Positions 18,238 to 50,700 of a stretch of DNA of 64,000 nucleotides are shown here, piece after piece. A model generated the notes under the pieces. The model made no database searches. It was not told the DNA's origin and saw only the letters and a list, made by a program, of their open reading frames with translations. This DNA is from Macrostomum lignano (lineage: Eukaryota): contig NIVC01001764.1 of NCBI GenBank assembly GCA_002269645.1, forward strand, positions 1 to 64,000, read 5' to 3'. A program made the translations under genes and the position numbers. Every line of letters begins with the position of its first letter. The stretch's first letter is position 1.

Positions 18238-18271
<34 letters not shown>

Positions 18272-18370: not shown

Positions 18371-18413
<43 letters not shown>

Positions 18414-18418
18414 TTCTG

Positions 18419-18479
<61 letters not shown>

Positions 18480-18488
18480 GCGTGTCTT

Positions 18489-18527
<39 letters not shown>

Positions 18528-18642
18528 GCGTGTCTTTCTGTCTGTCTGTCTGCCTGTCTGTCTGTCTGTCTGTCTGTCTATCTGCGTGTCTTTCTGTCTG
18601 TCTGTCTGCCTGTCTGTCTGTCTGTCTGTCTGTCTATCTGCG

Positions 18643-18695
<53 letters not shown>

Positions 18696-18704
18696 GTGTG
18701 TCTT

Positions 18705-18770
<66 letters not shown>

Positions 18771-20517: not shown

Positions 20518-20564
<47 letters not shown>

Positions 20565-31706: not shown

Positions 31707-32548
31707 CGGGGGTCGGCTGACCTCGGCCAGCCAAGCCGGGTCTTTTGAGAAATTTCACAATTGCAATCCGGCCCGCTCAAGGCTTGTGGCTCTTCTGAGC
31801 CCTCTTCTCTCTCTTCTCTTCTCTCCCCTCTTCTCTCCCCTGCCCTCTTCTCTCCCCTCTTCTCTCTCTTCTCTACCCTCTTCTCTCTCTTCTCTCTTTC
31901 CCTCTTCTCTCTCCCTATCCCCTCTCTTCTCTCCCCTCCCCTCGTCTCTCCCCTCTTCTCTCTCCCTCTCCCCTCTCTCCTCGCCCCTCCTCTCTCCACT
32001 CTCTCCCCTCTTCTCTCCCCTGCCCTGTTCTCTCTCCTCTTCTCTCCCCTCTTCTCTCCCCTCTTCTCTCTCTTCTCTCCCCTCTTCTCTCCCCTATTCT
32101 CTCCCCTCTTCTCTCCCCTCTTCTCTCCCCTCTTCTCTCCCCTCTTCTCTCCCCTCTTCTCTCCTCTCTTCTCTCCCCTCCCCTCTTCTCTCTCCCTCTC
32201 CCCTCTCTCCTCGCCCCTCCTCTCTCCATTCTCTCCCCTCCCCTCTTCTCTCCCCTCCCCTCTTCTCTCTCCCCTCTTCTCTTCCCTCTTCTCTCCCCTC
32301 TTCTCTCCCCTCTTCTCTCTTCCTTCTTCTCTCCCCTCTTCTCTCCCCTCCCCTCTTCTCTCCCCTCCCCTCTTCTCTCCCCTCCCGCCTTCTCTCCCCT
32401 CCCCTCTCAAGGTCTGTCTCCTCTCATCTCTCTCTTCCCTCCTCTTCTCTACTCTTATCTCTATCCCCCTTCCTCTCCCATCTGGCCCGCAGCCATGAGC
32501 TGCATGACTCATCTGGCCCTTTAATGTAAGAAAGTCTGCCGACCCCTG
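31707..32548. mobile_element. Non-autonomous hAT-type MITE with internal CT-rich minisatellite (copy 1)
   Basis: Ends CGGGGGTCGGCTGAC and (reverse complement) CAGGGGTCGGCAGAC..AAGGGCCAGAT resemble Charlie/MER58-type hAT termini. Flanks GCTTTGTC and GTTCAGTC match only 5/8. Confidence 0.6.
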
Positions 32549-33043
32549 GTTCAGTCTGTCCTCTCGATTATTCGATCCCTTGGAATCAAAGTGCTTTTTG
32601 TTCTTTTAAACTGTTATCCTCTCGCACCGCTTCGCACCTCACCCCACTGTTGAGTTCCTGTGCAGGGTGTCTCGCTTCTGTACAATATTATAATGATAGT
32701 ATAACCATATAATTACTATTGTTTATCCCAGTTCTATAAATACATAAACCTTTAGCTTTTCATTGCACGTTTCTTTTGGCAATTTTGAGAAAAAAGAATT
32801 GCTACAAATGCACATTCAATTGGTAGTGTTGACTTTCGGCTTTCTGATTGATCTGTGCTTTTAATCAACTGCTGGATTGAATCAACTACAGAGAAAACTG
32901 CAAAACAAATTTATTTTCTGTGATCACCGTGCCATCAATTCCAGATCATTTAATTGGGTCTGTCTGTTCTTTTTGCTTTTTAAATTCACCTTTAGATGCT
33001 TTATTAACTTCGTCTGTCTTTGCTATTTGAACCTCGCTTTGTC

Positions 33044-33880
33044 CGGGGGTCGGCTGACCTCGGCCAGCCAAGCCGGGTCTTTTGAGAAATTTCACAATTG
33101 CAATCCGGCCCGCTCAAGGCTTGTGGCTCTTCTGAGCCCTCTTCTCTCTCTTCTCTTCTCTCCCCTCTTCTCTCCCCTGCCCTCTTCTCTCCCCTTCTCT
33201 CTCTTCTCTACCCTCTTCTCTCTCTTCTCTCTTTCCCTCTTCTCTCTCCCTATCCCCTCTCTTCTCTCCCCTCCCCTCGTCTCTCCCCTCTTCTCTCTCC
33301 CTCTCCCCTCTCTCCTCGCCCCTCCTCTCTCCACTCTCTCCCCTCTTCTCTCCCCTGCCCTGTTCTCTCTCCTCTTCTCTCCCCTCTTCTCTCCCCTCTT
33401 CTCTCTCTTCTCTCCCCTCTTCTCTCCCCTATTCTCTCCCCTCTTCTCTCCCCTCTTCTCTCCCTCTTCTCTCCCCTCTTCTCTCCCCTCTTCTCTCCTC
33501 TCTTCTCTCCCCTCCCTCTTCTCTCTCCCTCTCCCCTCTCTCCTCGCCCCTCCTCTCTCCATTCTCTCCCCTCCCCTCTTCTCTCCCCTCCCCTCTTCTC
33601 TCTCCCCTCTTCTCTTCCCTCTTCTCTCCCCTCTTCTCTCCCCTCTTCTCTCTTCCTTCTTCTCTCCCTCTTCTCTCCCCTCCCCTCTTCTCTCCCCTCC
33701 CCTCTTCTCTCCCCTCCCGCCTTCTCTCCCCTCCCCTCTCAAGGTCTGTCTCCTCTCATCTCTCTCTTCCCTCCTCTTCTCTACTCTTATCTCTATCCCC
33801 CTTCCTCTCCCATCTGGCCCGCAGCCATGAGCTGCATGACTCATCTGGCCCTTTAATGTAAGAAAGTCTGCCGACCCCTG
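33044..33880. mobile_element. hAT-type MITE, copy 2 (produced by the tandem duplication)
   Basis: Same termini and flanks as copy 1. Confidence 0.6.
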
Positions 33881-34204
33881 GTTCAGTCTGTCCTCTCGAT
33901 TATTCGATCCCTTGGAATCAAAGTGCTTTTTGTTCTTTTAAACTGTTATCCTCTCGCACCGCTTCGCACCTCACCCCACTGTTGAGTTCCTGTGCAGGGT
34001 GTCTCGCTTCTGTACAATATTATAATGATAGTATAACCATATAATTACTATTGTTTATCCCAGTTCTATAAATACATAAACCTTTAGCTTTTCATTGCAC
34101 GTTTCTTTTGGCAATTTTGAGAAAAAAGAATTGCTACAAATGCACATTCAATTGGTAGTGTTGACTTTCGGCTTTCTGATTGATCTGTGCTTTTAATCAA
34201 CTGC

Positions 34205-34610
34205 TGGATTGGGATTTGGGAGATGCTGATTGGGATTTGGGAGATGCTGATTGGGATTTGGAAGATGCTGATTGGGATTTTGGAGATGCTGATTGGGATT
34301 TGGGAGATGCTGATTGGGATTTGGGAGATGCTGATTGGGATTTGGGAGATGCTGATTGGGATTTGGGAGATGCTGATTGGGATTTGGGAGATGCTAATTG
34401 TGATTTGGGAGATGCTGATTGGGATTTGGGAGATGCTGATTGGGATTTGGGAGATGCTGATTGGGATTTGGGAGATGCTAATTGGAATTTGGGAGATGCT
34501 GATTGGGATTTGGGATTTGAGAGATGCTGATTGGGATTTGGGATTTTGGAGATGCTGATGGGGATTTGGGAAATGCTGATTGGGATTTGGGAGATGAAGA
34601 TTAGGATTTT
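34205..34610. repeat. 21-bp minisatellite (GGGATTTGGGAGATGCTGATT), copy in duplicated unit A
   Basis: The same array recurs at 40515-40870. Confidence 0.95.
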
Positions 34611-34979
34611 AGAGATACTGATAGGGAGTAAGGAAGTGCAACATATAATTGGAGTTGGTACATACATTACATCCACATATGTACATTTAGAAGCCTTTTC
34701 GATTGGTCTCAATTTTGTTTGAAGCAGTGCTTGGTGCAGAGCCCTGTAGTGTTTACTTATTTTTTGCATGGTTACATCTGAATATTATTGGATATAAATT
34801 TCATGAAATTTACGCCTTTATTATTCAGGAAACAAAGGCCCAGTTTATTTCGATTTAGATTAGATGGCATCAACAACAGAGAGAATTAACAGCGGCTACA
34901 TTAATTAGGGAAAAACAGTCGTGGGTTTGTCGTTACAACTTTTCTTCGAGTAGGTGCGGCTCCTGTGTTGTTTACGGGC

Positions 34980-35945
34980 CGTGTGTTTGGGGCGGGCCCC
35001 GTGATACAAACTGGCCGTGTGTTTGGGGCGGGCCCCGTGATACAAACTGGCCGTATGTTTGGGGCGGGCCCCGTGATACAAACTGGCCGTGTGTTTGGGG
35101 CGGGCCCCGTGATACAAACTGGCCGTATGTTTAGGGCGGGCCCCATGATAGGAACTGGCCGTATGTTTGGGGCGGGCCTCATGATAGGAACTGGCCGTAT
35201 GTTTGGGGCGGGCCCCATGATAGGAACTGGCCGTATGTTTGGGGCGGGCCCCATGATAGGAACTGGCCGTATGTTTGGGGCGGGCCCCATGATAGGAACT
35301 GGCCGTATGTTTGGGGCGGGCCCCATGATAGGAACTGGCCGTATGTTTGGGGCGGGCCCCATGATAGGAACTGGCCGTATGTTTGGGGCGGGCCCCGTGA
35401 TAGGAACTGGCCGTATGTTTGGGGCGGGCCCCATGATAGGAACTGGCCGTATGTTTGGGGCGGGCCCCATGATAGGAACTGGCCGTATGTTTGGGGCGGG
35501 CCCCATGATAGGAACTGGCCGTATGTTTGGGGCGGGCCCCATGATAGGAACTGGCCGTATGTTTGGGGCGGGCCCCATGATAGGAACTGGCCGTATGTTT
35601 GGGGCGGGCCCCATGATAGGAACTGGCCGTATGTTTGGGGCGGGCCCCATGATAGGAACTGGCCGTATGTTTGGGGCGGGCCCCATGATAGGAACTGGCC
35701 GTATGTTTGGGGCGGGCCCCATGATAGGAACTGGCCGTATGTTTGGGGCGGGCCCCATGATAGGAACTGGCCGTATGTTTGGGGCGGGCCCCATGATAGG
35801 AACTGGCCGTATGTTTGGGGCGGGCCCCATGATAGGAACTGGCCGTATGTTTGGGGCGGGCCCCATGATAGGAACTGGCCGTATGTTTGGGGCGGGCCCC
35901 ATGATAGGAACTGGCCGTATGTTTGGGGCGGGCCCCATGATACGA
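34980..35945. repeat. 36-bp minisatellite (about 27 copies) within the 3' end of DUF2431-like gene A
   Basis: Unit TTTGGGGCGGGCCCCATGATAGGAACTGGCCGTATG; reads SWGPPQTYGQFL in the gene frame. Confidence 0.97.
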
Positions 35946-36721
35946 ACTGGCCCTGTGGTAGTTGCTGACCCTGTGCTTGTTGCAGGTTTTGCCGTCGGAA
36001 CTGCAGAGTAGCGAATTGCTTGTTTTCTGTCAGTGACTTTGCTTTATCAAGCAGAGGGTTAGTAAATTTGTGCACATATCCTCGATCCAGCATTTTGCCA
36101 ACAAATTCTCTGTCGGCACCGAGACACTCGTAGCCGTTCTGTGCCGCTACAGCCTTCGGATTGCCGTACCTTGTGACCCATTTTAACGGGTTTTTTTGGT
36201 AGAGTTGAGTCAACGCACAGCCCGATGAGCAGCAGCTCGCCATGGTTTTGAACCTTCGCCGCGGCTGCCATTACTCTCTCTAGGAAAGCCTGCTGATTCT
36301 CGCGATCTTTTTTCGACCACGGACACTGAAACCACAGGAAGATGTCCCAATTACTCTCCCGAGAAAGGGAAAGCGTCTGTAAAAATTCATCTCTGGTTTC
36401 TCCCATATTTGTAGCGTCAAGACGCAGTCGCCTTGGCCAGCGGTTTCTGATTTCTTGTTCTTGAACCAAAATGTCAGTAGCAACGATTCCGTCCCAAATC
36501 GGATGCCCGACGCCCAAAAGTTCGCCACGCAGTTTTGCAAATGCGGTGCTGAACGTGAAGAACTTGCCCTCTCCGAGGAACACAATGCATGTGCTGGGGT
36601 GAGGTGCAGGTACACGCAGTGAGATGAGAGGGTAGCTTTCACCATTGATGGGGAACTCATTAGTCCATTGAGGCTCCTGATTAATATTCATTGCCTCCAT
36701 CCTTTCTGCCAGTCCAGTCAT
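35179..36721 (-). pseudogene. DUF2431/BMT5-like SAM-dependent methyltransferase-fold gene, copy A; +1 frameshift at an A-run near 36190 (pseudogene or sequencing error)
   Basis: ORF 36059-36721 (FLGEGKFFTFS..LDAT..WFQCPW) continues in ORF 35179-36243 (KWVTRYGNPK..GYECLGADREF..GYVH). Deleting one A gives TLPKNPLKW, matching TLPKNKPTEEKW in copy B. Confidence 0.75.
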
Positions 36722-37394
36722 CTTCTATCCTGTTGCAAAGGAAATGATAGATGGCATAGTTAGTGCTGTCCTAAAAAAGGTTTAACAAAACTAATTAATA
36801 CGAGCGTACAGATAATTTTTGCACAGAGCTCGCATTGTAAATATTTAGCAACGCAGAGTATTAAGTGTATTTCCACTTACCTGTTGCCAATAATGATCGA
36901 AAATATGCTTAAAAAGGCTTAAAAATATGCTTACAGATCAAGTGTTAGGCTGTAAAAGCTTTAGGCTTCGGCCTAAGTGTATTTATAAGCTTGGGGAGCC
37001 ACTAAAGATCGTGAAACCAAGCCTACAGTTGAAAGTTGAACTTGGGGGCGAAAACTAGAAGCGAAGATAAGAAGCCTAAAGTGGGGGTAGTTAGAAGACA
37101 GCAAGTGAGATTAGAGCTATGATAAGAGTCTAACAGCCACCCCCATCAATGCAATCTGGCCAGGGAGCAATGACACGACTCACCTGAAAGACACTCCGGT
37201 GGCCTGACGTGCGAATCAATTTAAAGATGAACTCTGGACTTGACCTCTTATAGTCCCTGGACTCAACCTTGCGAAGTAACTGATATCGAATTACCCTCCT
37301 CGCCACGTAGCAACGCGTTTGTCTAATTTTGCTGCGTCTGTTTTTTAGACCCTGCCATTGCTAAGCCAGCGGCATGGTCTGAAAAAGTGAGACT

Positions 37395-37515
37395 GAGAGC
37401 GGAGGTGGAGATGGAGATGTGAGGCTGAGAGGGGAGGTGGAGATGGAGAGGTGAGGCTGAGAGGGGAGGTGGAGATGGAGAGGTGAGACTGACAGGAAGG
37501 TGGAGACCGAGAGGT
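37395..37515. repeat. About 30-bp GA-rich minisatellite (GAGAGGAGGTGGAGATGGAGAGGTGAGACT), short copy
   Basis: Same family at 43445-44030 and 45505-46262. Confidence 0.85.
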
Positions 37516-37734
37516 GATACTGAGATAATGTCTAATGATGGATCTTCCTGCATCCATAAATGCTTTTTGCTTTTTTGCTCACAAAATTTGCTCTTTTTAT
37601 AAAGGCTGCTTCTGCTTTAACTGCTCGAAATTTTTTTCTCAATTTTCAAATTCTGAGAAATTTTTGGCTCTCTGGCTCGACTGAAAGCCTTCATGGCTGC
37701 GGCTTCAGTTCAACAGCACTTGACGAGCAAATAA

Positions 37735-37870
37735 TTGTTCACCAATGCTGTGTTCACCAATGCTGTGTTCACCAATGCTGTGTTCACCAATGCTGTGTTC
37801 ACCAATGCTGTGTTCACCAATGCTGTGTTCACCAATGCTGTGTTCACCAATGCTGTTTACAATGCTGTGT
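37735..37870. repeat. 15-bp tandem repeat (CACCAATGCTGTGTT)
   Basis: About 9 copies. Confidence 0.92.
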
Positions 37871-38639
37871 ACAATTTGCATATAGCTACGATTTCAAACT
37901 TCTAAAACTTTTTTTCTTTGTAAAACATTGAGGTCAAAAAGTCTTTGATAAAGGATTTGAATGTAAGAGAGGCGGTGAGAGAGGTAGAGAGAGTGGTAGA
38001 TAAAGTAGTCCAACATGGGAGAGATTGCTCAGTGGCTCTGGTCTGCTCACAGCAGTTCGGTTTTCAGCTAATTTTGAGCACAGATAAATAACTGACTCAA
38101 TTGTGACTGCTTAGCCAGAGGTGAGCTTTGGCTACAGTCAGGGGTCAGTATGATAAGAACCATTTCGAATAGAGAGAGAAGTTTCGCTTGAAGCATTGAC
38201 TTTTATTTTCGATTAGATAGCAGCTTTAAGGCTCATAGCAGCATGCGAGTAACTTGGGGGTTGGGGAACCGCAAACTGCAGTGGCACCCCGCTGTGCTGC
38301 GTCACTGCTGGCCGCTTCTCTCGTCTTCCAGATAAGAAACTCGAGTTGGAATCGAAAGAGAAGTTCAAAGATAGGCACAAGGTCAGGTATGGGGCAATTC
38401 ACTGTAAATTATTTTGCACTTAGCAAGCTTGTGTTGGGGACTCAGCATAATCTTCACTCATCACTACAGCGCAGGAAGGTGCCGGGACAGCAGCTGCGCC
38501 GACAGCGGTGGCTCTGCAGAGAGGGTGGGGCTTGGATGGCTCAGCTCAAAATGCATTGAAACATTGCGCTCAGAATGATGGATGGTAACCAAGATTGACA
38601 GGAGCTCAGCTTTTGCCACATCTTCGATGCCTCAACAGG

Positions 38640-39050
38640 TGCCCCAACCAAGAGACAGGGGCGCCCACCAACAGACAGGGGCGCCCACCAACAGACAGGG
38701 GCGCCCACCAACAGACAGGGGCGCCCACCAACAGACAGGGGCGCCCACCAAGAGACAGGGGCGCCCACCAACAGACAGGGGCGCCCACCAAGAGACAGGG
38801 ACGCCCACCAAGAGACAGGGACGCCCACCAAGAGACAGGGGCGCCAACCAAGAGACAGAGGCGCCCACCAAGAGACAGGGGCGCCAACCAAGAGACAGGG
38901 GCGCCAACCAACAGACAGGGGCACCCACCAACAGACAGGGGCACCCACCAACAGAAAGGGGCCCCCACCAACAGACAGGGGCGCTTACCAAGAGACAGGG
39001 GCGCCCACCAAGAGACAGGGCGCCCACCAAGAGACAGAGGCGCCCACCAG
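38640..39050. repeat. 20-bp minisatellite (ACAGACAGGGGCGCCCACCA)
   Basis: Reverse complement of the array in UPB1 intron 6. Confidence 0.93.
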
Positions 39051-39976
39051 TGCCGCTCAAGCGCCGAGAATCACAGGATGCATGGCTTGTGCAGTTTCGA
39101 GCTGGTTCAGAAGTCACAAAAACCCTTTGAACTTTCCCAGGGACAAAATGGACCTCCCGATCCACTTGCAGGCTGCTGGCGTCCCAGCTGATTATTAGAT
39201 AATTAACTAATTAGCAGATGTACACGTGCAGTAAAACTGCATGAATGTCTCAAGTCATCAAAATAGCCTCGGGTGCTGCAGTCGTGGCGCACAACTCAGA
39301 GTTTAAATAAAATGCTCGTTTATCACTGACTACTGTTAGTAGGAAGGGGCGAGGCCTCACCTGCTGTCCGCAATTGTTTGAATACAAATTATTCATAAAA
39401 ATGTCACAACCACCGCTCTCTAGAGACCTTGTTGCGGGCTCTTCTACAGACCGATAGCAGACGGACATTTTTCCCAAATATTTTCAGCGCCAATATTATA
39501 AATACTAGCTATTGCTAGTGCCTCCCTTATTTAAATTAATGCCGAAAGTTTAGGAGGGGCGGGCGAAGGTCTCGGATATTATGCATGGAAGTGAATAAGC
39601 AAATAGCTGATAAATTGTTCCAAAGAGTCTGTCATATTTGCTAGAGTTGAGAGCTGAACCCACAGATCGCTATGAAATAAGCCAATCCAGACAAAAGGAA
39701 AGTAGAAAGGAAAAACCGAGCAACCTCGATCCAGTGGAAGCGCCGCCAAGGACCACTAAAAGTTATCGTTGTATCAGGACGCAACACTCGTACATATTGC
39801 AAAATTACGAGTATTTGAAGGCCTGCTTGTATGCATTGAAGCTCAACTTTAAATGCTCATAAATCTGGGCTGGTTAAACTTAGAGTGATAATTTTTCGCC
39901 AGGTTGTTCAATAGAACAAAGTAAAATATCAGCCAAGAAAATATATTTGTATTCTATAAGTAAACAGCGAAGAAAT

Positions 39977-40216
39977 GCTGGCGCCCCTCTAGTGTACATT
40001 ATGGCGCCCCTCTAGTGTACATTATGGCGCCCCTCTAGTGTATATTATGGCGCCCCTCTAGTGTATATTATGGCGCCCCTCTAGTGTATATTATGGCGCC
40101 CCTCTAGTGTATATTATGGCGCCCCTCTAGTGTATATTATGGCGCCCCTCTAGTGTATATTATGGCGCCCCTCTAGTGTATATTATGGCGCCCCTCTAGT
40201 GTATATTATGGCGCCC
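39977..40216. repeat. 23-bp minisatellite (GGCGCCCCTCTAGTGTATATTAT)
   Basis: About 10 copies. Confidence 0.93.
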
Positions 40217-40514
40217 CTTCTTCTCCCATCTGGCCTCAAACTGCTTTTTGTTCTTTTAAACGGTTATCCTCTCGCACCGCTACGCACCTCACCCCACTGT
40301 TGAGTTCCTGTTCAGTGTGTCTTGTTTCTGTACAATATTATAATCATATAATTACTATTGTATATCCCAGTTCTATAAATACATCAACCTTTAGCTGTTC
40401 ATCGCACGTCTCTTTTTGGCAATTTTGAGAAAAAAGAATTGCTACTAATGCACATTCAATTGGTAGTGTTGACTTTCGGCTTTCTGATTGATCTGTGCTT
40501 TTAATCAACTGCTG

Positions 40515-40870
40515 GATTGGGATTTGGGAGATGCTGATTGGGATTTGGTAGATGCTGATTGGGATTTGGGAGATGCTGATTGGGATTTGGGAGATGCTGA
40601 TTGGAATTTGGGAGATGCTGATTGGGATTTTGGAGATGCTGATTGGGATTTGGGAGATGCTGATTGGGATTTGGGAGATGCTGATTGGGAATTGGGAGAT
40701 GCTGATTGGGATTTGGGAGATGCTGATTGGGATTTGGGAGATGCTGATTGGGAATTTGGGAGATGCTGATTGGGATTTGGGAGATGCTGATTGGGATTTG
40801 GGAGATGCTGATTGGGATTTGGGAGATGCTGATTGGAATTTGGGAGACGCTGATTGGGATTTTGGAGATA
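40515..40870. repeat. 21-bp minisatellite (GGGATTTGGGAGATGCTGATT), copy in duplicated unit B
   Basis: Preceded (40217-40515) by a diverged copy of the 32470-32880 module. Confidence 0.95.
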
Positions 40871-41995
40871 GTGCAGAGCCTGTAGTGTTCATTCATTTTC
40901 TGCGTGGTTATACATTGGATATAAATTTCGTCAAATGTACGCTTTTATGTATAGGATAATATAGCGTTATAATTCTATTACTTCACTTACGCCAAACTGC
41001 ATGGATTTCAATGAGCAGGACGATTTGCAAAATTTCAATGCCATAGACAAATGCATACAGTATTGGAAAATTACTTAAGGCACACACAAGCTGATTAGCT
41101 GGAGCAGGCTTTAACCACTTTGAAACTCGTGCGATACATCGATCTTGACAAAATCGATTTGTCGTTCGACCAATTATTTTTGGATATGGAGCCAGCTCAA
41201 GATGCGACAAGAGTCAATAACGATAACATACCTACTAGACAGCTCGATAATAATACTGACGGCTGAAGATTTACAACGACACTTGGACGACATCTAAAGG
41301 CATCTCATTCCCAGGCTCGGCTTATGGCTGAGACTCCCCAGTGTTGGCACTATCCCTAGAATGGTTTTGTCTCTGGTTGTCTCCAGCTCTCTACAGATTG
41401 AAGTTCGCGTTGAACCTCTTGGATCGACAGGTCAGGATGCTGTACCACCTGCTGAGAAAAAATGTTCTGTCGACAAGGTGGAGATTGTCGGTGAGCTAGG
41501 GTTGTGGTGTTGTTCAAGTGACAGTAGTAAAAATTCGATGAACCTTGGTTGAAGCTAATTAATCAAACTGTTATTTGCTGTTATCTTGATTATTTGATAT
41601 TTTTACGAGCTATTAAATATGCTTGCCTTCCTGAAGACACGTTTCTTACGGACTAGTGCATCATATATGCCAACAAGCCCATTATCTATTTAATGGTCCT
41701 GACAGCAAGCCCATTTTCTAGATAATGGTCCAGTGATACTTGAGTGTGGCCATAGACAAGCCCATTCCCAAAAAAATAAGTGGACCATTGTGCGAGCTTT
41801 TCTGGCGTGAGTGGAGTTAACTGTTCAAGAAACGAAAACCAAGTCTGTTTTGATTTAGATTTAATGGCGGCAACAAAGAGGGAATTAACAGCTACTATAA
41901 CAAAGAGGGAATCAACAGCGGCTACAATATAGGGAAAAACAGTCGTGGGTTTGTTGCTACTACTTTTCTTTGAGTAGTTGCGGGTCCTGTGCTGT

Positions 41996-42769
41996 TTACG
42001 GGTCCTGTGTTTGGTGTGGGCCCTGTGCTGGGTGCAGTTGTTGCCGTTTGAAAAGCAGAGTAGCAAATTGCCTGTTTTCTTTCAGTATTTTGCGTTTTCC
42101 AAAATTAAGCCCAGGGTCAGTAAATTGGTGCTCATATCCTCCATCCAGCATTTTGCCAACAAATTCTCTGTCGGCGCCGAGACACTCATAGCCGTTCTGT
42201 GCCGCTACAGCCTTAGGGTTGCCGTAGCTTGTGACCCATTTTTCTTCGGTTGGTTTGTTTTTTGGTAGAGTTGGGTCAACACACAGCCCGATGAGCAGCA
42301 GCTCGCCAGGGTCTTGAACCTTCGCGGCGGCTGCCATTACTTTCTTTAGGAAAGCCTGCTGGTTCGAATATTTGCGCCCGTTCTCGTCCTTGTCCGCCCA
42401 CGGACACTGAAACCACAGGACGATGCGAGATGGCTTCTGATCGAGGAAAAGTTTCTCTAAAAAAACGTTTCTGGTTTCTCCCATCTTTGTAGCGTCAAGT
42501 CTCAGTCGCCTGGGCCAGCCGTCTTTGATTTCTTTTGAAACCGAAATGTCAGTAGCAACAATTTCGTCATAATTTGAGCCACGCAGTTTTGCAAACGCGG
42601 TGCTGAACGTAAAATTGCCCTCTCCGAGGAACACGAAGATTGTGCTGGGCTGCGGCAGTGGATCTAAACACAGTATGGTGTGACTGTACTCGACTTTATT
42701 GATAACTGTGCCTACATATTCAAATTTTTTCCATTGAAGCTCTTGGCCTTGATTCTGATCTTCTGCCAT
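41996..42769 (-). CDS. DUF2431/BMT5-like SAM-dependent methyltransferase-fold protein, copy B, intact, 257 aa (MAEDQNQ..), single coding exon
   Basis: Motifs VFLGEGNFTFSTAFA, IVATD, LRLDATKM, WFQCPW (at the FNFPH position), LLIGL and GYEH resemble the DUF2431 family. The start is set by a 5'UTR intron acceptor (42778) conserved with copy A. Confidence 0.75.
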   Translation of the reverse strand: MAEDQNQGQELQWKKFEYVGTVINKVEYSHTILCLDPLPQPSTIFVFLGEGNFTFSTAFAKLRGSNYDEIVATDISVSKEIKDGWPRRLRLDATKMGETRNVFLEKLFLDQKPSRIVLWFQCPWADKDENGRKYSNQQAFLKKVMAAAAKVQDPGELLLIGLCVDPTLPKNKPTEEKWVTSYGNPKAVAAQNGYECLGADREFVGKMLDGGYEHQFTDPGLNFGKRKILKENRQFATLLFKRQQLHPAQGPHQTQDP

Positions 42770-43444
42770 ATTCTGTCCTGTTGATAAGGAAATAATATAT
42801 AGCATTATTAGTGCTGTCCTAAAACTGGCTTTATCAAAACTAATATATACAGATTAAAACTCATGCATAGCTTGCATTATAAGTTCCCATCAGACCAGCA
42901 GCATTTAGTAAATAGAATGCTATTACCTGTTGCCAAGAACGATCGACAGTGCTTGAATAGAACTTACAAAACGCTTAAAAGTCACCCGAACTGTTTTAGC
43001 TTAAAGCTTCGGTGGAGAGAGATGAGAAATCTGTTTGGTTCCAGGCTATTAATACCCTACTAAGCTCGCACATGTTAGGGTGTGTGGCCCTTTCTCGGCC
43101 AGTCTGTCCGGCAAATCGTGCGGGTGCGTGTTGCCACCCCAGCTATTGAGGGGGGGGGGGCTGGCAGCTTGACTCTTTACTCCCCTCTCCTTCCCTGTTG
43201 CAGGCTGAAACACGGCGCAAACTCTCCTTTCCATCTCTAAAAAGGAAACATTAAAAAGACACGAGCGTACATATGTACGTTCTCGATTAGTCGGGCTTTT
43301 TTGAGGGACCACCACGGAAAAGCCATGGACAAGCCTTTACAAATTCTGTACATTTCCTTTGACTTATTGCTTGCTCTCGATTCTCTACATTGCTTATCAA
43401 GAATTTTAGTATTCCTTATACCCTGTCAGCTATTTACGAAGGGT

Positions 43445-44030
43445 AGGTGGAGCTGGAGAGGTGAGACTGAGAGAGGAGGTGGAGATGGAGAGGTGAGACT
43501 GAGAGAGGAGATGGAGATAGAGAGGTGAGACTGAGAGAGGAGTTGGAGATGGAGAGGTGAGACTGAGAGAGGAGATGGAGTTGGAGAGGTGAGACTGAGA
43601 GAGGAGGTGGAGATGGAGAGGTGAGACTGAGAGAGGAGGTGGAGTTGGAGAGGTGAGACTGAGAGAGGAGATGGAGATAGAGGTGAGACTGAGAGAGGAG
43701 GTGGAGATGGAGAGGTGAGACTGAGAGAGGAGGTGGAGATGGAGAGCTGAGACTGAGAGAGGAGATGGAGATGGAGAGCTGAGACTGAGAGAGGAGATGG
43801 AGATAGAGAGGTGAGACTGAGAGAGGAGATGGAGATAGAGAGGTGAGACTGAGAGAGGAGGTGGAGATGGAGAGCTGAGACTGAGAGAGGAGATGGAGAT
43901 GGAGAGCTGAGACTGAGAGAGGAGATGGAGATGGAGAGGTGAGATGAGAGAGTAGATGGAGATGGAGAGATGAGACTTACAGGGGAGGTAGAATAGAAAT
44001 GGAGAGGTGAGATGAGCGGCAGGTGCAAAT
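43445..44030. repeat. About 30-bp GA-rich minisatellite
   Basis: Direct inspection. Confidence 0.92.
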
Positions 44031-44545
44031 GGAGAATTGCATACGAAAGTGCATCCACATTATGCAGTTAGAGAACGGTCCATGTTTGGAGTCCCCAATC
44101 AACGTATTAAAATGCATCGCACGCCAAACTCTCGAAAACCATACGGGGCGGTGGGGTTAGAGCGGTTTAAGAGTTGCTGCGACAAGGGCTGGCTGTCTAG
44201 ACAAGTTCCAGCATGATGGCAGTGGTAGACAGTTGTCTACTAGGTAGATAATCGCTGCGGGAGGAATGCGGCAGCTGCATTAAACAGAGCTGGCCAGGGC
44301 TGAGCTGAGAGTTGCTGGCTGCGGCAGGGTGCGATCTAGACAAGTTCGAACAGGCCGGGCGGAGTTGCTGCGTGGGCAACATGCTAGGGCCTGGGTAGGC
44401 TGTTGGAGGGGTCTAAGGAATTGACAGATTCTTCTGGTTTTTTTCTCCGTTTGTGTTTTTTTCAGACTCGTTTGTCCCGCCTACCCAACCGGAATCTGTA
44501 ACTGGACCCGGTGAGTTATCTAGCCCCCATTACCCAGACAGACCC

Positions 44546-44710
44546 GGGGGCGCTTCATAAGATCTATATTTCACAACGCCTAAAGCACATGACTTCACAT
44601 CACCTGAATTTCATATCACCTAAATTTCACAACGCCTAAAACTGAATTTAAAGGAGAGAAGCAAAGATTTTAGGCGTTGTGAAATTTAGGTTTTTTGAAA
44701 AGCGTCCCCC
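44546..44710. mobile_element. 165-bp MITE-like foldback element
   Basis: 5' end GGGGGCGCTTCATAAGATCTATATTTCACAACGCCTAAA versus reverse complement of 3' end GGGGGACGCTTTTCAAAAAACCTAAATTTCACAACGCCTAAA. No clear TSD. Confidence 0.6.
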
Positions 44711-45349
44711 TCTAAGGGGGACTAATGTTTGACTGGAATTCCTCTTTGTGCTCTGTTACTTCTCTCTGCCTGCAATGTACTTTTTAGCCTTCTAATGGGG
44801 GTAACCTAGAGGATTAGAATCCCAATTTGTCACCCTCTACCCTTGACGTCTCGATAGCGCAATTGAATTAGTGTCATTAATTCCTCGCGACTGAGTTCAA
44901 TGTTTCGATATAATATACTAAAGTTGGTTTGCATTATACTCAAATATGTATCATATTGTACCTAATTTTATCAATTTACGCCTTACATTATTTGCATCTA
45001 CAGTGTATGTCTTATGCCTACATCTATATACGGCTGCATTATTTCTGAAATTATTACTTGAATCTACAATATTATGCGCCTACTACACTAATAAAGCGAT
45101 ATGTATCGAAAATATGCTTTGTAAGAGTATTATGTCTATATATGTTTCGTATTATGCATTATGCACCGATATGTACTTTGCCTACCGATATGTTTAATAT
45201 GCGTCAATATGTTTGTACAGCCTACAATGTGTGTGTTGTCTACTTTTTGTGTAAATATACGTAATTTAACCTACTATAAGTAGTTTTCACTAGTCTACTT
45301 TTGTTAATAACTAAAAAATCGATAACTTATTGAAAAAATCAATAAGTAC

Positions 45350-45460
45350 ATATCCGGGCGCCTGTAGCATACATATCGGGGCGCCTGTGGCTTACACATC
45401 GGGGCGCCTGTGGAATACATATCGGGGCGCCTGTGGCATACATTTCGGGGCGCCTGAACA
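45350..45460. repeat. About 21-bp repeat x5 (ATATCGGGGCGCCTGTGGCAT)
   Basis: Direct inspection. Confidence 0.8.
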
Positions 45461-45504
45461 CCCACCCCACCTCTAAAAACCGCCGTTACGGGGCCCTTAG
45501 TAGT

Positions 45505-46262
45505 GAAGGGGTGAGACTGATAGGGAGGTGGAGAGGTGAGACTGAGAGGGAGTTGGAGATGGAGAGGTGAGACTGAGAGAGGAGTTGGAGATGGAGAAGT
45601 GAGACTGAGAGGGAGTTGGAGATGGAGAAGTGAGACTGAGAGGGAGTTGGAGATGGAGAAGTGAGACTGAGAGAGGAGTTGGAGATGGAGAAGTGAGACT
45701 GAGAGGGAGTTGGAGATGGAGAGGTGAGAGTAAGAGGGGGGTGGAGATGGAGAAGTGAGAGTAAGAGGGGGTGGAGATAGAGAAGTGAGACTGAGAGAGG
45801 AGTTGGAGATGGAGAGGTGAGAGTAAGAGGGGGGTGGAGATGGAGAAGTGAGACTGAGAGAGGAGTTGGAGATGGAGAGGTGAGACTGAGAGGGAGTTGG
45901 AGATGGAGAGGTGAGAGTAAGAGGGGGTGGAGATGGAGAAGTGAGACTGAGAGGGAGTTGGAGATGGAGAGGTGAGACTGAGAGGGAGTTGGAGATGGAG
46001 AAGTGAGACTGAGAGAGGAGGTGGAGATGGAGAGGTGAGACTGAGAAGGGAGATGGAGAGGTGAGAATGAGAAGGGAGATGGAGAGGTGAGAATGAGAAG
46101 GGAGATGGAGAGGTGAGAATGAGAAGGGAGATGGAGAGGTGAGAATGAGAAGGGAGATGGAGAGGTGAGAATGAGAAGGGAGATGGAGAGGTGAGACTGA
46201 GAGGGGAGGTGGAGATGGAGAGGTGAGACTGAAAGGGAAGGTGGAGATGGAGAGGTGAGACT
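45505..46262. repeat. About 30-bp GA-rich minisatellite, third copy of the family
   Basis: Direct inspection. Confidence 0.92.
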
Positions 46263-46859
46263 GTAACAGCGTGGATCAATGATGTTAGCCCAGATAATTT
46301 TCACTGTATCAATTAAGGTGAGTACAATTTACTGTAGGTTAGGTCGGGCCTCTCTACCTAGTTAAGTAGTATCTGGGGAGGGTGAAAATTAAAAACTTTC
46401 TGCGTACAGGGTTGAAAATAGGTTAAAAAAACTTTCTACCAAAAAGCCACGGCAGTTGAGCAAGGTATAAACTGCCTGAGTTCCTTCAACTGGTAAGATT
46501 TCCCTTTAAATGTTGATTGTCAAGAAACAAATGTAGTTTATTCAGTTAAAGTTGTAAAATTAAAGTTGTAAAATTGTACAAGTTGTAAAATTAAAAAAAT
46601 TGAAGTAAATCGTGATTTTTTAAGACAATAGGACAATGATATATTTTAGTTTTTGTTGATTTGTATTTAAAAAATTTGATTTCCTAAAGCTGGAATACAG
46701 CTCTAAATTATAATAATAGTAAAAATAATAATTAATTAAGTCGCGTCAACTTGTTACTCGAGTGAATCCGTCAGCGTGCAGGTCTCGGCGTTTTACAGCG
46801 TTCACTATGTCCGCTTTTGCACTATTATCGCCATTCTTCTCTCTGTTGCGACCTGTGCG

Positions 46860-47774: not shown

Positions 47775-50700
47775 TCATTTTTCCGCTATAATTTGCGGCT
47801 GAAAGTCCGGCTTCACGGCTTTGGCTAAACTCTCAGCGTAGAGATCCAATCGCTGCGTCATCTGCAATAGAAAATTTTGAACTTAGTAAAACGGCCCTTT
47901 TAGGGGCAAGTTAAAAAATACAACACAATGATGCGATTCTGTTCATAAAGATAATACTCGTAAGCAGAAAATGACCCTGCTTCTCTAGTATTCTTGATAA
48001 TCAAGAATTTTTTATTTTGTATTTTTTTAATCTATTTAATTTTTCGCACTAATTTGAAATCGCGCTCGCGCTGTACTTTATACTCACCCGAAAGCCCCAT
48101 TGGTCCTTGACCTGGCGGCAGAGGTTCAAGTCCGCTTCGACTACCAGCAGGCCGTCTGACACCCGCGACAGGCCCTGAGAGTTTAGGAGGGGAAATGATT
48201 TTTTTTAAAATTGATTACTCCCATCAAAATTGCAACAAAATATTCCAATCAGATGTAACAACTCATAGTTGGGAACCAATTGCAAATTTTTATATAGCAT
48301 TTTATCCAAGTTGCAATATTACTGTGACTGAAAAATTTATGGATCTTCGTAAGTTCTTTTTTCAGTTAACACTATCTTAGGTGCGCATCCCTATGTTTTA
48401 GGGGGGGGGGGCTGTCTCGTTGTTGGGTGCCGCTGTCTCGTAGTTGGGTGCCGCTGTCTCGTAGTTGGGTGCCACTGTCTCGTAGTTGGGTGCCGTTGTC
48501 TCGTAGTTGGGTGCCGCTGTCTCGTAGTTGGGTGCCACTGTCTCGTAGTTGGGTGCCGCTGTCTCGTAGTTGGGTGCCGCTGTCTCGTAGTTGGGTGCCA
48601 CTGTCTCGTAGTTGGGTGCCGCTGTCTCGTAGTTGGGTGCCACTGTCTCGTAGTTGGGTGCCACTGTCTCGTAGTTGGGTGCCACTGTCTCGTAGTTGGG
48701 TGCCACTGTCTCGTAGTTGGGTGCCACTGTCTGTTAGTGGGCGCCACTGTCTGTTGGTGGGCGCCCCTGTCTGTTGGTGGGCGCCCCTGTCTGTTGGTGG
48801 GCGCCCCTGTCTGTTGGTGGGCGCCCCTGTCTGTTGGTGGGCGCCCCTGTCTGTTGGTGGGCGCCCCTGTCTGTTGGTGGGCGCCCCTGTCTGTTGGTGG
48901 GCGCCCCTGTCTGTTGGTGGGCGCCCCTGTCTGTTGGTGGGCGCCCCTGTCTGTTGGTGGGCGCCCCTGTCTGTTGGTGGGCGCCCCTGTCTGTTGGTGG
49001 GCGCCCCTGTCTGTTGGTGGGCGCCCCTGTCTGTTGGTGGGCGCCCCTGTCTGTTGGTGGGCGCCCCTGTCTGTTGGTGGGCGCCCCTGTCTGTTGGTGG
49101 GCGCCCCTGTCTGTTGGTGGGCGCCCCTGTCTGTTGGTGGGCGCCCCTGTCTGTTGGTGGGCGCCCCTGTCTGTTGGTGGGCGCCCCTGTCTGTTGGTGG
49201 GCGCCCCTGTCTGTTGGTGGGCGCCCCCTGTCTGTTGGTGGGCGCCCCTGTCTGTTGGTGGGCGCCCCTGTCTGTTGGTGGGCGCCCCTGTCTGTTGTTG
49301 GGCGCCCCTGTCTCTTGGTGGGCGCCCCTGTCTGTTGGGTGATTTTGCATAATCTTATATCATCTATCTTGCACAGAAACGGAACTCACAGGACTCCGCG
49401 CCCCGTTAGGAGCAGTCACGTACGATGAACCGTAGAAATGACCAAAATCATGGTGAGCACTCCTGCCGTCACCGGAAGTGAACTCGTGAGCGAAATTCTC
49501 CTGTAGGAGAGCAGATAGACACAATATATTCTACGAGCGTAATTAAATAAGAAACAAAATTGTGGGTGTTAGACAGGATGTTAGAGACTCTGTTAGAGTG
49601 GGTGTGTTAGACAGAGTGTTAGAGACTCTGTAGTGGGTGTTAGACAGGGTGCTAGAGACTCTGTTAGAATGGGTGTGTTAGACAGTGTGTTAGAGACTCC
49701 GTTAGAGTGGGTGTGTTAGACAGGATGTTAGAGACTCTGTTAGAGTGGGTGTGTTAGACAGAGTGTTAGAGACTCTGTAGTGGGTGTTAGACAGGGTGCT
49801 AGAGACTCTGTTAGAATGGGTGTGTTAGACAGAGTGTTAGAGACTCTGTTAGAGTGGGTTTGTTAGACAGTGTGTTAGGGACTCTGTTAGAATGGGTGTG
49901 TTAGACAGTGTGTTAGAGACTCCGTTAGAGTGGGTGTGTTAGACAGTGTGTTAGAGACTCCGTTAGAGTGGGTGTGTTAGACAGAATGTTAGAGACTCCG
50001 TTACAGTGGGTGTTGAAGTTAAATAAAGTGTTAGAGACGCGATCAAAAGCTGGTGTTAGACAGGACACCATGGCTCAAACTCACTGTGCCCACTCGGTTG
50101 ATAGCAACAGAGTAATAGTTATTGGCTATGGCGGCATTGCGAGCCTCAATCGGCCAGAAAGCCTCGCTGAGGCTGTCCACCGTAGCGGAGGGGTTGAACA
50201 CGATCTCTGCACCGTTCAAACCGTACATCAGCCAGTTCTGCGGGTGGTGCCGGCCGTAGCAGATGTTCACCGCGATGCGACCGAACTGGGTGTCGAATAC
50301 CGGATGACCCAGCTCGCTCTCCATGTAGTAGGTTGACTGCGGGTGAACGAGTGATAGAGTTCATGAGTTCATGAGTGAGTTCATGAGTTTATGAGTGAGT
50401 TCATGAGTTCATGAGTGAGTTCATGAGTTCATGAGTGAGTTCATGAGTTCATGAGTGAGTGAACGAGTGAATGAGTGAGTTCATGAGTTAATGAGTTCAT
50501 GAGTGAGTGAACGAGTGAATGAGTTAGTGAGTGAGTTAGTGAGTGACTGAACGAGTGAATGAGTGAACGAGTGAATGAGTGAACGAGTGAATGAGTGAAC
50601 GAGTGAATGAGTGAGTGAGTGAATGAGTGAGTGAATGAGTGAGCGAGTGTGTGAGTTAGTGAGTTAGTGAGTGAGTTATTGAGTGAACAAGAGAAAGAGA

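What the first reader, a model, noticed from the sequence alone, without database searches (positions are those of the whole stretch)
34972..42950. Tandem pair of stand-alone, fast-evolving DUF2431/BMT5-like methyltransferase-fold genes in an accessory region
Seen: two minus-strand paralogs with GEG(N/K)F..TFS, LDAT, WFQCPW and GY.H motifs. Some blocks are nearly identical (YGNPKAVAAQNGYECLGADREFVGKMLD, VMAAAAKVQ..GELLLIGLCVD), while the N-termini and loops are very divergent with in-frame indels. Established: DUF2431 is the rRNA m3U methyltransferase domain of yeast Bmt5/Bmt6 and the N-terminal domain of animal FDXACB1, where the catalytic-loop motif is typically FNFPH and the genes are conserved housekeeping genes. 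Inference: the altered motif (FQCPW), absence of FDX-ACB, intronless CDS, tandem duplication and hypervariable loops suggest a lineage-specific family with a different substrate (RNA/DNA modification, defence or effector role), possibly retro- or horizontally acquired. Best candidate for an undescribed system in the window.
Basis: partly seen in the sequence, partly recalled or inferred. Interest (0 to 1): 0.75.

Follow-up and report, generated by a model that had tools for sequence, protein, structure and literature searches.

The report
Tandem divergent BMT5-like methyltransferase genes
Two neighbouring flatworm genes, one intact and one broken, belong to an unstudied branch of a known RNA methyltransferase family. 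They are a modestly interesting, uncharacterised enzyme family, not a new kind of system.

Summary
The window is the first 64 kb of Macrostomum lignano contig NIVC01001764.1. The two minus-strand paralogs are real.

- **Copy B (41996-42769)** is an intact, single-exon gene of 257 aa that GenBank annotates. It passes the Pfam BMT5-like threshold. Its AlphaFold model is a seven-stranded class I SAM methyltransferase fold.
- **Copy A (36721 down to about 35953)** is not intact. It has a +1 frameshift in an A7 run (36191-36197). Its 3' end is invaded by a 36-bp x27 minisatellite (34977-35952). GenBank has no gene model for it.

Both copies belong to a distinct, uncharacterised clade with about 320 cluster representatives. 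Named members come from a sponge, Macrostomum and agaricomycete fungi. The clade is marked by WFQCPW where FDXACB1 has FNFPH. It is homologous to the FDXACB1/BMT5 domain (hhalign 98.8%) but separate from it (bootstrap 100/100).

Whole-gene dN/dS is 0.5-0.6, so positive selection is not shown. I found no prokaryotic, viral or defence-system relatives.

The most likely function of copy B is SAM-dependent N-methylation of an RNA base. That function is inferred, not shown.

This is a new variant of a known kind, of moderate interest.

The parts
41996..42769 (-). Copy B: intact single-exon CDS, 257 aa plus stop (protein P0001). The longest ORF extends to an upstream ATG at 42805, but the ATG at 42769 aligns with copy A's start.
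   Evidence: ORF list. GenBank gene of 257 aa at these record coordinates. Pfam PF10354 at 30.3 bits, E 6e-7. AF2 model and Foldseek hits to class I methyltransferases.
42770..42977 (-). 5' flank shared by copies B and A (about 71-73% identical). It includes the conserved ttttag|gacagcac, a possible trans-splice or 3' splice acceptor (inference only).
   Evidence: blastn pairs A 35946-36933 with B 41998-42977 at 73%. The flank alignment is 146/206 identical. The sequences were read.
36198..36721 (-). Copy A, N-terminal part. It holds motif I (GEGKFFTFS), LDAT, WFQCPW and the LLLIGLCVD block, in frame -1.
   Evidence: ORF 36059-36721. tblastn frame -1 hit. Alignment to copy B.
36191..36197 (-). 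Run of 7 A that shifts copy A's frame by +1. Six A would restore LPKNPLKWVTRYGNPKAV.
   Evidence: Sequence. Repair experiment. Frames -1 and -2 in tblastn. It could be a true mutation or a homopolymer error of the PacBio-based assembly (PMC5730564).
35953..36190 (-). Copy A, C-terminal domain part (YGNPKAVAAQNGYECLGADREFVGKMLDRGYVH...QFATLQFRRQ), in frame -2.
   Evidence: ORF 35179-36243. tblastn frame -2 at 77% identity.
34977..35952 (.). 36-bp minisatellite of 27.1 copies at 98% match. It grew out of the last codons of copy A; copy B has a single unit at about 41998-42027. In copy A's frame it encodes GPPQTYGQFLSW repeats up to a stop at 35179-35181.
   Evidence: TRF. blastn pairs A 34872-35003 with B 41899-42027. 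Translation. Sequences read.
34972..34974 (-). Ancestral TAA stop codon of copy A. It is homologous to copy B's stop at 41996-41998 and now lies beyond the minisatellite.
   Evidence: Compare ggcccgTAAacaacacagga (copy A) with ggacccgTAAacagcacagga (copy B).
33918..34627 (.). Downstream flank of the copy A unit, with a 21-bp satellite (34202-34627). It is 92% identical to the flank of the copy B unit.
   Evidence: TRF. blastn pairs 33918-34574 with 40236-40869.
40236..40869 (.). Downstream flank of the copy B unit, with the same 21-bp satellite (40510-40869).
37387..37525 (.). 32-bp satellite upstream of copy A. The same family lies upstream of copy B.
43448..43977 (.). 32-bp satellite upstream of copy B. 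A third block lies at 45524-46263.
42890..43445 (-). Unique upstream flank of copy B. It is 87-97% identical to the flank of paralog M1 on a second M. lignano contig. Identity collapses downstream of about 42890.
   Evidence: Global alignment with sliding identity.

Best explanation
The finding is a two-member piece of a tandem gene array next to the HECTD1 gene in Macrostomum lignano.

**What the genes encode.** Each encodes a small (about 260 aa) single-domain protein with the class I (Rossmann-like) SAM-dependent methyltransferase fold. The proteins belong to a distinct, uncharacterised clade of the BMT5-like/DUF2431 superfamily. In that clade the catalytic loop after strand beta-4 reads WFQCPW, where FDXACB1 reads FNFPH.

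**Copy B.** It keeps every core motif:
- motif I, GEGNFTFS, after beta-1;
- T73-D74 at the end of beta-2;
- D92-A-T after beta-3;
- Q121-C-P-W124 after beta-4;
- G211-Y-x-H214 in the C-terminal part.

It is an annotated gene in a transcript-derived annotation. I take it to be the working gene.

**Inferred mechanism.** Copy B binds SAM through motifs I to III. It uses the Q-x-P-aromatic loop to hold a flipped-out base by hydrogen bonding and stacking, as the (D/N/S)PP(Y/F/W) loop does in N-methyltransferases. It then transfers the methyl group to a ring or exocyclic nitrogen of an RNA base. The target is not the one set by the FNFPH-type loop of the Bmt5/FDXACB1 branch.

**Copy A.** It is a decaying duplicate, with a +1 frameshift and a minisatellite in its 3' end.

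**How the array evolves.** It evolves by unequal crossover and gene conversion among old paralog lineages. That produces the alternation of near-identical and very divergent blocks.

**Shown:** the fold, the family placement, the motif substitution, the array structure, the mosaicism and the damage to copy A.
**Inferred:** SAM binding, catalytic activity, RNA as the substrate, and copy A being a true pseudogene.
For: **Gene and fold**
- Copy B is an intact ORF and a GenBank gene model. The GenBank annotation derives from a genome-guided transcriptome (PMC5730564).
- Pfam BMT5-like is above the gathering score for copy B.
- The AF2 model has pLDDT 77 and pTM 0.81. Its strands, at 43-47, 70-73, 87-89, 115-121, 157-163, 194-200 and 235-242, are in the canonical order.
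- Foldseek returns 487 PDB hits at E<=1e-3. SAM-binding Rossmann-fold proteins (nearly all methyltransferases) fill the 50 listed, among them the rRNA methyltransferases KamB/NpmA and NSUN4 and the mRNA cap methyltransferase Abd1.

**Family**
- The profile search finds 322 representatives at E<=1e-3.
- 51 of 67 members hit PF10354.
- WFQCPW is exact in 125 motif matches among 177 sequences, and Q-x-P-aromatic is almost universal.
- hhalign against real FDXACB1 N-domains gives probability 98.8% and E 6e-17. Motif I, the DAT/DCT motif and WFQCPW/FNFPH fall in register.
- The canonical clade separates from the WFQCPW clade 100/100.

**Long-term constraint**
- The C-terminal half of A or B against M1 has dS of about 1.2-1.3 but omega of 0.27-0.31.

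**Array dynamics**
- Duplicated unit and satellites.
- Flank-to-CDS identity break.
- Third-position patchwork.
- Three HECTD1-adjacent loci with different copy content.

**Copy A damage:**
Against: - No biochemical or expression data were examined directly. No solved structure of any BMT5-like protein was found by sequence.
- Foldseek TM-scores are only 0.40-0.45.
- Among the Macrostomum copies, motif I carries indels: copy A GEGKFFTFS, M1 GDGKENCTFS, M2 GDGEGDSKFS. M2-type copies have lost LDAT.
- N-half omega for copy B against M1 is 1.2. The SAM-binding half may therefore be under relaxed constraint, and some or all copies may be non-catalytic.
- Fungal members have GES..RSL in place of GEGNFTFS.
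- The substrate is unknown even for FDXACB1. Animal 28S m3U is made by SPOUT1 (PMC11641110).
- Copy A's frameshift sits in a homopolymer of a PacBio-based assembly and may be an error. Copy A's missing gene model may reflect the annotators' exclusion of transcripts that overlap repeats.
Confidence: 0.6

Rival explanations
1. The Macrostomum copies, copy B included, are pseudo-enzymes or a decaying family. They keep the fold and the C-terminal half for binding some ligand but no longer methylate anything.
For: - Motif I has indels in copy A, M1 and M2, and M2-type copies have lost LDAT.
- N-half omega is 0.54-1.2, against 0.27-0.73 for the C-half.
- Only copy B reaches the Pfam threshold. Copy A, M1 and M2 do not match at E<=1.
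- Two of the five HECTD1-adjacent copies have frame breaks, and a third (L008) appears to share M2's break.
Against: - Copy B has a canonical GEGNFTFS, T-D, DAT and WFQCPW.
- WFQCPW, the presumed catalytic loop, is the most conserved element of the whole clade. That is hard to explain without catalysis or substrate binding.
- The C-half has been under long-term purifying selection.
Confidence: 0.25
2. The invariant-looking Cys of WFQCPW is a catalytic nucleophile. The clade would then methylate C5 of a pyrimidine (m5C or m5U chemistry) rather than a nitrogen.
For: - Cys122 is at least 90% conserved. It sits in motif IV, where DNA m5C methyltransferases carry their Pro-Cys (established knowledge).
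- NSUN4 is among the Foldseek hits.
Against: - The Cys is replaced by G, S, M, Y or L in members that are otherwise conserved. Examples are WFQGPW in M. lignano P0013 and WFQSPW in P0173.
- I did not look for, or notice, a second catalytic motif of the m5C or m5U families.
- The NSUN4 hits are no better than generic methyltransferase hits.
Confidence: 0.07
3. The genes are simply the flatworm orthologues of the housekeeping Bmt5/FDXACB1 rRNA methyltransferase.
For: - Pfam assigns copy B to BMT5-like.
- hhalign shows homology to the FDXACB1 N-domain.
Against: - The clade is separate at 100/100 bootstrap.
- FNFPH is replaced by WFQCPW.
- There is no FDX-ACB domain.
- The genes are multi-copy, variable in copy number and mosaic.
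- The Pfam score is only just above the cut-off.
Confidence: 0.03
4. The genes were acquired horizontally from bacteria or viruses, or they act as a defence or effector system.
For: - The distribution among named organisms is patchy: a sponge, Macrostomum and agaricomycete fungi.
- The CDS is intronless.
- The genes lie in a repeat-rich region.
Against: - Motif scans confirmed by tblastn found no relative in 185,579 GTDB species genomes or in IMG/VR.
- PADLOC and NCBIfam give no match.
- BFVD gives only generic methyltransferase-fold matches.
- The Macrostomum sequences form one clade, together with an intron-bearing paralog.
Confidence: 0.05

Closest known systems
FDXACB1 N-terminal domain (vertebrate and insect ferredoxin-fold anticodon-binding domain-containing protein 1; Pfam PF10354)
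   Same: The domains are homologous: hhalign probability 98.8%, E 6e-17 over 179 columns. Motif I is nearly the same (GEGNFTFS against GEGNFSFA). Both have a T at the end of beta-2, a D-(A/C)-T motif and a C-terminal GY(x)H/GYRS region.
   Different: - Catalytic loop: WFQCPW here, FNFPHCG(R/K) there.
- These proteins have no FDX-ACB domain.
- They lack the GQGGTPxD and SWQV blocks of FDXACB1.
- They form a separate clade at 100/100.
- They are multi-copy and mosaic rather than a single conserved gene.
- The function of FDXACB1 is itself unknown.
Saccharomyces cerevisiae Bmt5 (YIL096C), the 25S rRNA m3U2634 methyltransferase
   Same: Both fall in the same Pfam family (BMT5-like). Both have a Rossmann-like SAM methyltransferase fold. 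Bmt5 is the family's only member I found with a demonstrated activity; mutations in its SAM pocket abolish or strongly reduce m3U (PMC3950682).
   Different: No Bmt5 sequence was compared directly here. The Pfam score of copy B is marginal (30.3 against 24.7). The motif IV residues that should contact the base differ. There is no evidence for nucleolar localisation or an rRNA target.
16S rRNA A1408 N1-methyltransferases KamB/NpmA and other small class I RNA methyltransferases
   Same: They are among the best structural matches to the copy B model (Foldseek E about 1e-6, TM 0.42-0.53 on the target). They are single-domain enzymes of similar size.
   Different: Sequence identity is only 12-15%. 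There is no family-level sequence relationship. The similarity is in the general fold only.
(D/N/S)PP(Y/F/W) N-methyltransferases (HemK/PrmC, RsmC/RsmD, N6-adenine DNA methyltransferases)
   Same: They have a polar-x-Pro-aromatic loop after beta-4, at the same topological position as Q121-C-P-W124 (position from the AF2 model; the role of the loop is established knowledge).
   Different: This resemblance is recalled from memory and was not tested by alignment here. The first residue is Gln, not Asp, Asn or Ser, and the second is Cys, not Pro.

Membership tests
Pfam PF10354 BMT5-like / DUF2431 superfamily | Match to the family HMM above the gathering score | tested here: met
   Copy B scores 30.3 bits against a cut-off of 24.7, E 6e-7, covering residues 60-210 of the ORF and profile positions 3-152 of 168. 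51 of 67 clade members match at E<=0.01, the best at 2e-12. Repaired copy A, M1 and M2 do NOT match at E<=1. They are members only through the clade.
Pfam PF10354 BMT5-like / DUF2431 superfamily | Profile-level homology to bona fide members (FDXACB1 N-domain) | tested here: met
   hhalign of A3 against A6 gives probability 98.8%, E 6e-17, 179 aligned columns, with the motifs in register.
Pfam PF10354 BMT5-like / DUF2431 superfamily | Class I Rossmann-like SAM methyltransferase fold with a seven-stranded sheet | tested here: met
   The AF2 model has pLDDT 77.1 and pTM 0.81, with seven strands in canonical order. There are 487 PDB Foldseek hits at E<=1e-3, and SAM-binding Rossmann-fold proteins (nearly all methyltransferases) fill the 50 listed. 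This rests on a predicted structure only.
Canonical Bmt5/FDXACB1 orthologue group | Motif IV F-N-F-P-H (invariant F, F, P, H, G in 14 real FDXACB1-type sequences) | tested here: not met
   The aligned residues are W-F-Q-C-P-W. WFQCPW is the clade-wide form.
Canonical Bmt5/FDXACB1 orthologue group | Groups with the canonical sequences in a tree; a single conserved copy | tested here: not met
   NJ bootstrap separates the canonical sequences from the WFQCPW clade 100/100. At least 5 HECTD1-adjacent copies plus 2 copies of a distant paralog exist in one assembly.
FDXACB1 | C-terminal FDX-ACB (PF03147) domain | tested here: not met
   Neither copy A nor copy B has such a Pfam hit, and copy B is only 257 aa.
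Bmt5 (functional class: rRNA m3U methyltransferase) | SAM-dependent N3-uridine methylation of large-subunit rRNA | not testable with these tools
   This needs biochemistry or nucleoside analysis. The yeast reference is PMC3950682.
Functional gene (copy A) | Uninterrupted reading frame across the domain | tested here: not met
   Copy A has a +1 frameshift at 36191-36197 and a minisatellite at 34977-35952. An assembly error at the homopolymer cannot be excluded.

The most novel reading that the evidence does not exclude
The WFQCPW clade is a separate, ancient opisthokont methyltransferase family. Its altered catalytic loop gives it a substrate or chemistry not yet assigned to any enzyme. Its repeated lineage-specific expansions and turnover may reflect an arms-race-type role, for example marking or disabling foreign or selfish RNA or DNA. 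The evidence for expansion is the radiation of unnamed members (probably sponge), several Mycena copies, tandem-domain proteins, and mosaic arrays of variable copy number in Macrostomum.
Probability: 0.2. Interest if true: 0.65.

Novelty: new variant of a known kind. Interest (0 to 1): 0.35.

Why it matters
BMT5-like/DUF2431 is a methyltransferase family in which I found a demonstrated activity for only one member, yeast Bmt5. The role of its animal representative, FDXACB1, is unknown.

This work defines a second, sizeable branch with a different and strongly conserved catalytic loop. That gives RNA-modification researchers a concrete, testable candidate for an unassigned modification. M. lignano is tractable for the test, because transgenesis is established there and RNAi is in routine use.

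The locus is also a compact example of three processes acting together in a repeat-rich, recently duplicated genome. Gene conversion builds mosaic paralogs. Unequal crossover changes copy number. Minisatellite growth destroys a coding 3' end.

It is not evidence for a new kind of biological system.

Tried and rejected
- **PDB sequence searches.** Copy B alone and the 67-sequence profile gave no meaningful hit. No experimental structure anchors the family.
- **PADLOC and NCBIfam.** Neither gave a hit.
- **The search for related loci.** A 10-sequence alignment found no relatives in GTDB genomes or IMG/VR. These scans need near-exact VWFQCPW or NFTF[ST][VI]A[LF]A, so very divergent prokaryotic relatives could be missed.
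- **Literature.** Searches for DUF2431, BMT5-like, PF10354, the Mlig gene identifiers and the motifs FNFPH/WFQCPW found nothing on this clade.
- **Cys122 as nucleophile.** I considered this and downgraded it, because the Cys is replaced in several members.
- **'Flanks more conserved than the CDS means diversifying selection'.** I rejected this in favour of mosaic gene conversion plus satellite-bearing flanks. The unique 5' flank of copies A and B is as diverged as the CDS (71-73%). Third-position identities alternate in blocks.
- **Whole-gene positive selection.** It is not supported: omega is 0.52-0.62. Only the N-half of copy B against M1 reaches 1.2, over 117 codons, and I did not test that for significance.
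- **Organisms behind the ENA and Logan members.** These could not be identified. Long contigs carry eukaryotic gene fragments such as dynein heavy chain and IFT46. I suspect they are mostly sponges, but that was not shown.
- **Canonical FDXACB1/BMT5 gene in M. lignano.** I did not determine whether one exists.

Full report
**Source and setting**

Copy B's protein (P0001) is encoded on contig NIVC01001764.1 of Macrostomum lignano assembly GCA_002269645.1, at record positions equal to the window coordinates. The window is therefore the first 64 kb of that contig. The region is rich in satellites.

- On the plus strand, 15056-30233 carries ORFs with TRIP12-like TPR, ankyrin, Sad1/UNC, BTHB and HECT domains. 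This is a HECTD1-like E3 ligase gene.
- On the minus strand, upstream of the finding, lies a CN_hydrolase gene that runs from about 47775 past 52769, the limit of the fetched locus.

**Checking the observation**

tblastn of copy B against the whole window finds only itself and one paralog (E 2e-70). The similarity is far beyond chance.

Copy B is an intact ORF at 41996-42805. The annotated CDS starts at the second ATG, 42769. That ATG aligns with copy A's start. The CDS is a single exon of 257 codons.

Copy A is not intact.
- Its similarity to copy B is split between frames -1 and -2.
- The switch lies in a run of seven A at 36191-36197. Removing one A restores ...LPKNPLKWVTRYGNPKAVAAQNGYECLGADREFVGKMLD....
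- The last codons of copy A have been amplified into a 36-bp minisatellite: 27 copies, 98% match, at 34977-35952.
- The unit is homologous to copy B's C-terminal codons, and copy B has a single unit.
- A repaired copy A would encode the domain followed by about 22 copies of GPPQTYGQFLSW, stopping at 35179.
- GenBank has no gene model for copy A. However, the annotators removed transcripts that overlap repeats (PMC5730564).

**What the proteins are**

- Copy B matches Pfam PF10354 (BMT5-like) at 30.3 bits, against a cut-off of 24.7.
- A profile search of 1.84 billion cluster representatives found 322 relatives at E<=1e-3 and 210 at E<=1e-10.
- Of 67 aligned members, 51 match PF10354, the best at 2e-12.
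- With that alignment, AlphaFold2 gives a model with pLDDT 77 and pTM 0.81. It has seven strands in the canonical class I methyltransferase order, plus an N-terminal hairpin.
- Foldseek returns 487 PDB hits at E<=1e-3. SAM-binding Rossmann-fold proteins (nearly all methyltransferases) fill the 50 listed, led by a C6-FPP methyltransferase and the KamB/NpmA-type 16S rRNA methyltransferases. TM-scores are 0.40-0.45.
- BFVD gives only generic methyltransferase matches.

**Relation to the canonical family**

I retrieved real FDXACB1 sequences, using a probe recalled from memory that proved 93% identical to macaque FDXACB1. Their alignment shows LLVGEGNFSFA, ATC, GVDCTKL and an invariant F-N-F-P-H-x-G.

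Profile-profile comparison with the 67-member alignment gives probability 98.8% and E 6e-17 over 179 columns at 16% identity. Motif I, DAT/DCT and WFQCPW/FNFPH are in register.

In an NJ tree the canonical sequences separate from the WFQCPW clade in 100 of 100 bootstraps. The genes are homologous to FDXACB1/BMT5, but they are not its orthologues.

WFQCPW is exact in 125 motif matches among 177 sequences, and Q-x-P-aromatic is nearly universal.

**Who has the clade**

Named members are:
- Amphimedon queenslandica A0A1X7TIT2;
- Rickenella mellea, Mycena vulgaris, M. galericulata and M. amicta, plus a UniRef entry already labelled 'BMT5-like domain-containing';
- several M. lignano proteins.

Most other members come from unannotated ENA or Logan contigs. 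Some of those contigs exceed 1 Mb and carry eukaryotic gene fragments. Several proteins hold two or three tandem domains, and one has N-terminal ankyrin repeats.

No relatives were found in GTDB species genomes or in IMG/VR, and none in PADLOC or NCBIfam. The family is thus neither specific to Macrostomum nor evidently of prokaryotic or viral origin. I found no paper on it.

**Evolution of the locus**

The A and B units repeat with a period of about 6.3 kb. Each has a 32-bp satellite upstream and a 21-bp satellite downstream. The core, meaning the CDS plus about 200 bp of 5' flank, is 71-73% identical.

Two other contigs of the same assembly carry homologous loci next to HECTD1.
- L002 holds M2 and M1.
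- L008 holds one M2-like copy.
- M2-type copies share a frame break and have LEII or LKII where LDAT should be.

A more distant paralog (P0013, two identical copies) has two introns and reads WFQGPW.

In the trees, A pairs with B and M1 pairs with M2. All Macrostomum-type sequences form one clade.

Between the window and L002, the 5' flank of copy B and M1 is 87-97% identical down to about 42890. Identity then drops to 62-81% through the CDS, and the 3' flank is unalignable.

Third-codon-position identities show that copy B is a patchwork:

| Copy B codons | Closer to | Third-position identity |
|---|---|---|
| 13-43 | M1 | 0.88 |
| 43-92 | A | 0.84-0.92 |
| 92-116 | M1 | 0.88 |
| 128-250 | A | 0.72-0.92 |

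The M1 C-terminal half is near synonymous saturation against A and B.

Whole-gene dN/dS is below 1:

| Pair | dN/dS | 95% CI |
|---|---|---|
| A-B | 0.62 | 0.43-0.93 |
| B-M1 | 0.54 | 0.37-0.78 |
| A-M1 | 0.52 | 0.37-0.71 |

The C-half against M1 is 0.27-0.31. The N-half of copy B against M1 is 1.2.

I read this as an old family under long-term constraint on its C-terminal half. Its tandem copies exchange segments by gene conversion and unequal crossover and are frequently lost. Positive selection is not shown.

**Mechanism (inferred)**

The model places the motifs as follows:
- GEGNFTFS follows beta-1;
- T73-D74 ends beta-2;
- D92-A-T follows beta-3;
- Q121-C-P-W124 follows beta-4.

From established knowledge of class I methyltransferases, the first three of these are the SAM-binding motifs I to III. 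The fourth is the catalytic, target-binding motif IV.

A polar-x-Pro-aromatic loop is characteristic of N-methyltransferases that act on flipped-out bases or amides. The only member of the superfamily I found with a demonstrated activity, yeast Bmt5, makes m3U2634 in 25S rRNA (PMC3950682). Animal 28S m3U is made by SPOUT1 (PMC11641110).

I therefore propose that copy B is a SAM-dependent N-methyltransferase acting on an RNA base, with a specificity different from that of the FNFPH-type branch.

My confidence:

| Claim | Probability |
|---|---|
| Copy B is an active methyltransferase | about 0.5-0.6 |
| It acts on RNA | about 0.4 |
| Fold and family placement | above 0.9 |

The main rival is loss of catalysis in the Macrostomum copies. 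Evidence for it is the motif I indels, the loss of DAT in M2 and the relaxed N-half. A Cys-nucleophile C5 chemistry is unlikely, because the Cys is replaced in some members.

**Verdict**

It is a new variant (a distinct clade) of a known methyltransferase family, made up of one probably functional gene and one damaged duplicate in a dynamic tandem array. It is of moderate interest as an enzyme family with no assigned function. It is not a new kind of system.

Noticed in passing
window 15056-30233 (+): A series of large ORFs carries TRIP12-like TPR/ARM, ankyrin, Sad1/UNC, BTHB and HECT domains. This is a HECTD1-like E3 ubiquitin ligase gene, convergent with the methyltransferase-like array. The same neighbour occurs at the two other M. 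lignano loci (L002, L008).
   Followed up: partly
window 34977-35952; L002 836-2450 (single unit at window 41858-41942): Different minisatellites have grown out of the 3' ends of different array members. One is 36 bp x27 in copy A. The other is about 81 bp x20 after copy M2 on contig NIVC01002393.1. Each is represented by a single unit at copy B.
   Followed up: partly
window 42890 (breakpoint); L002 9274-11405: Identity between two M. lignano loci drops abruptly from 87-97% to 62-81% about 120 bp upstream of the start codon, and the 3' flank is unalignable. Together with the block-wise third-position identities, this indicates gene-conversion or unequal-crossover breakpoints. The exact history is unresolved.
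   Followed up: partly
L002 1-700 and L008 10001-10860: M2-type paralogs on two separate contigs share a frame break and have LEII or LKII where LDAT should be. They are either a conserved pseudogene lineage or a gene with a tiny intron. UniProt model A0A1I8IQS6 bridges the break.
   Followed up: partly
L009 10001-13565; L010 10001-12664: The distant M. lignano paralog P0013 (Mlig024652/Mlig016493, motif WFQGPW) has two introns, at about residues 160 and 275. The HECTD1-adjacent copies have none. The polarity (retroposition or intron gain) is undecided.
   Followed up: no
L001 364-1785; proteins P0003, P0004, P0005, P0009, P0012, P0023: Many non-flatworm members, Amphimedon included, carry two or three tandem copies of the domain in one protein. 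The downstream copies are degenerate, for example YQLPP in place of WFQCPW. One member (P0114) has N-terminal ankyrin repeats.
   Followed up: no
window 32000-34630, 37387-40220, 43448-46263: The area is dense with unrelated satellites: CT-rich 12/17-bp, 21-bp, 32-bp, 15-bp, 20-bp and 23-bp units. All three frames are open in several of them, which creates long spurious ORFs on both strands. One such ORF gives a false FAM47 Pfam hit on the 36-bp repeat peptide.
   Followed up: partly
window 47775-52769+ (-): An annotated multi-exon gene with a CN_hydrolase (nitrilase-superfamily) domain lies upstream of copy B on the same strand.
   Followed up: no
window 1-8000: The first 8 kb are markedly AT-rich (GC 0.30-0.38), against 0.42-0.63 for the rest of the window. 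The cause was not examined.
   Followed up: no
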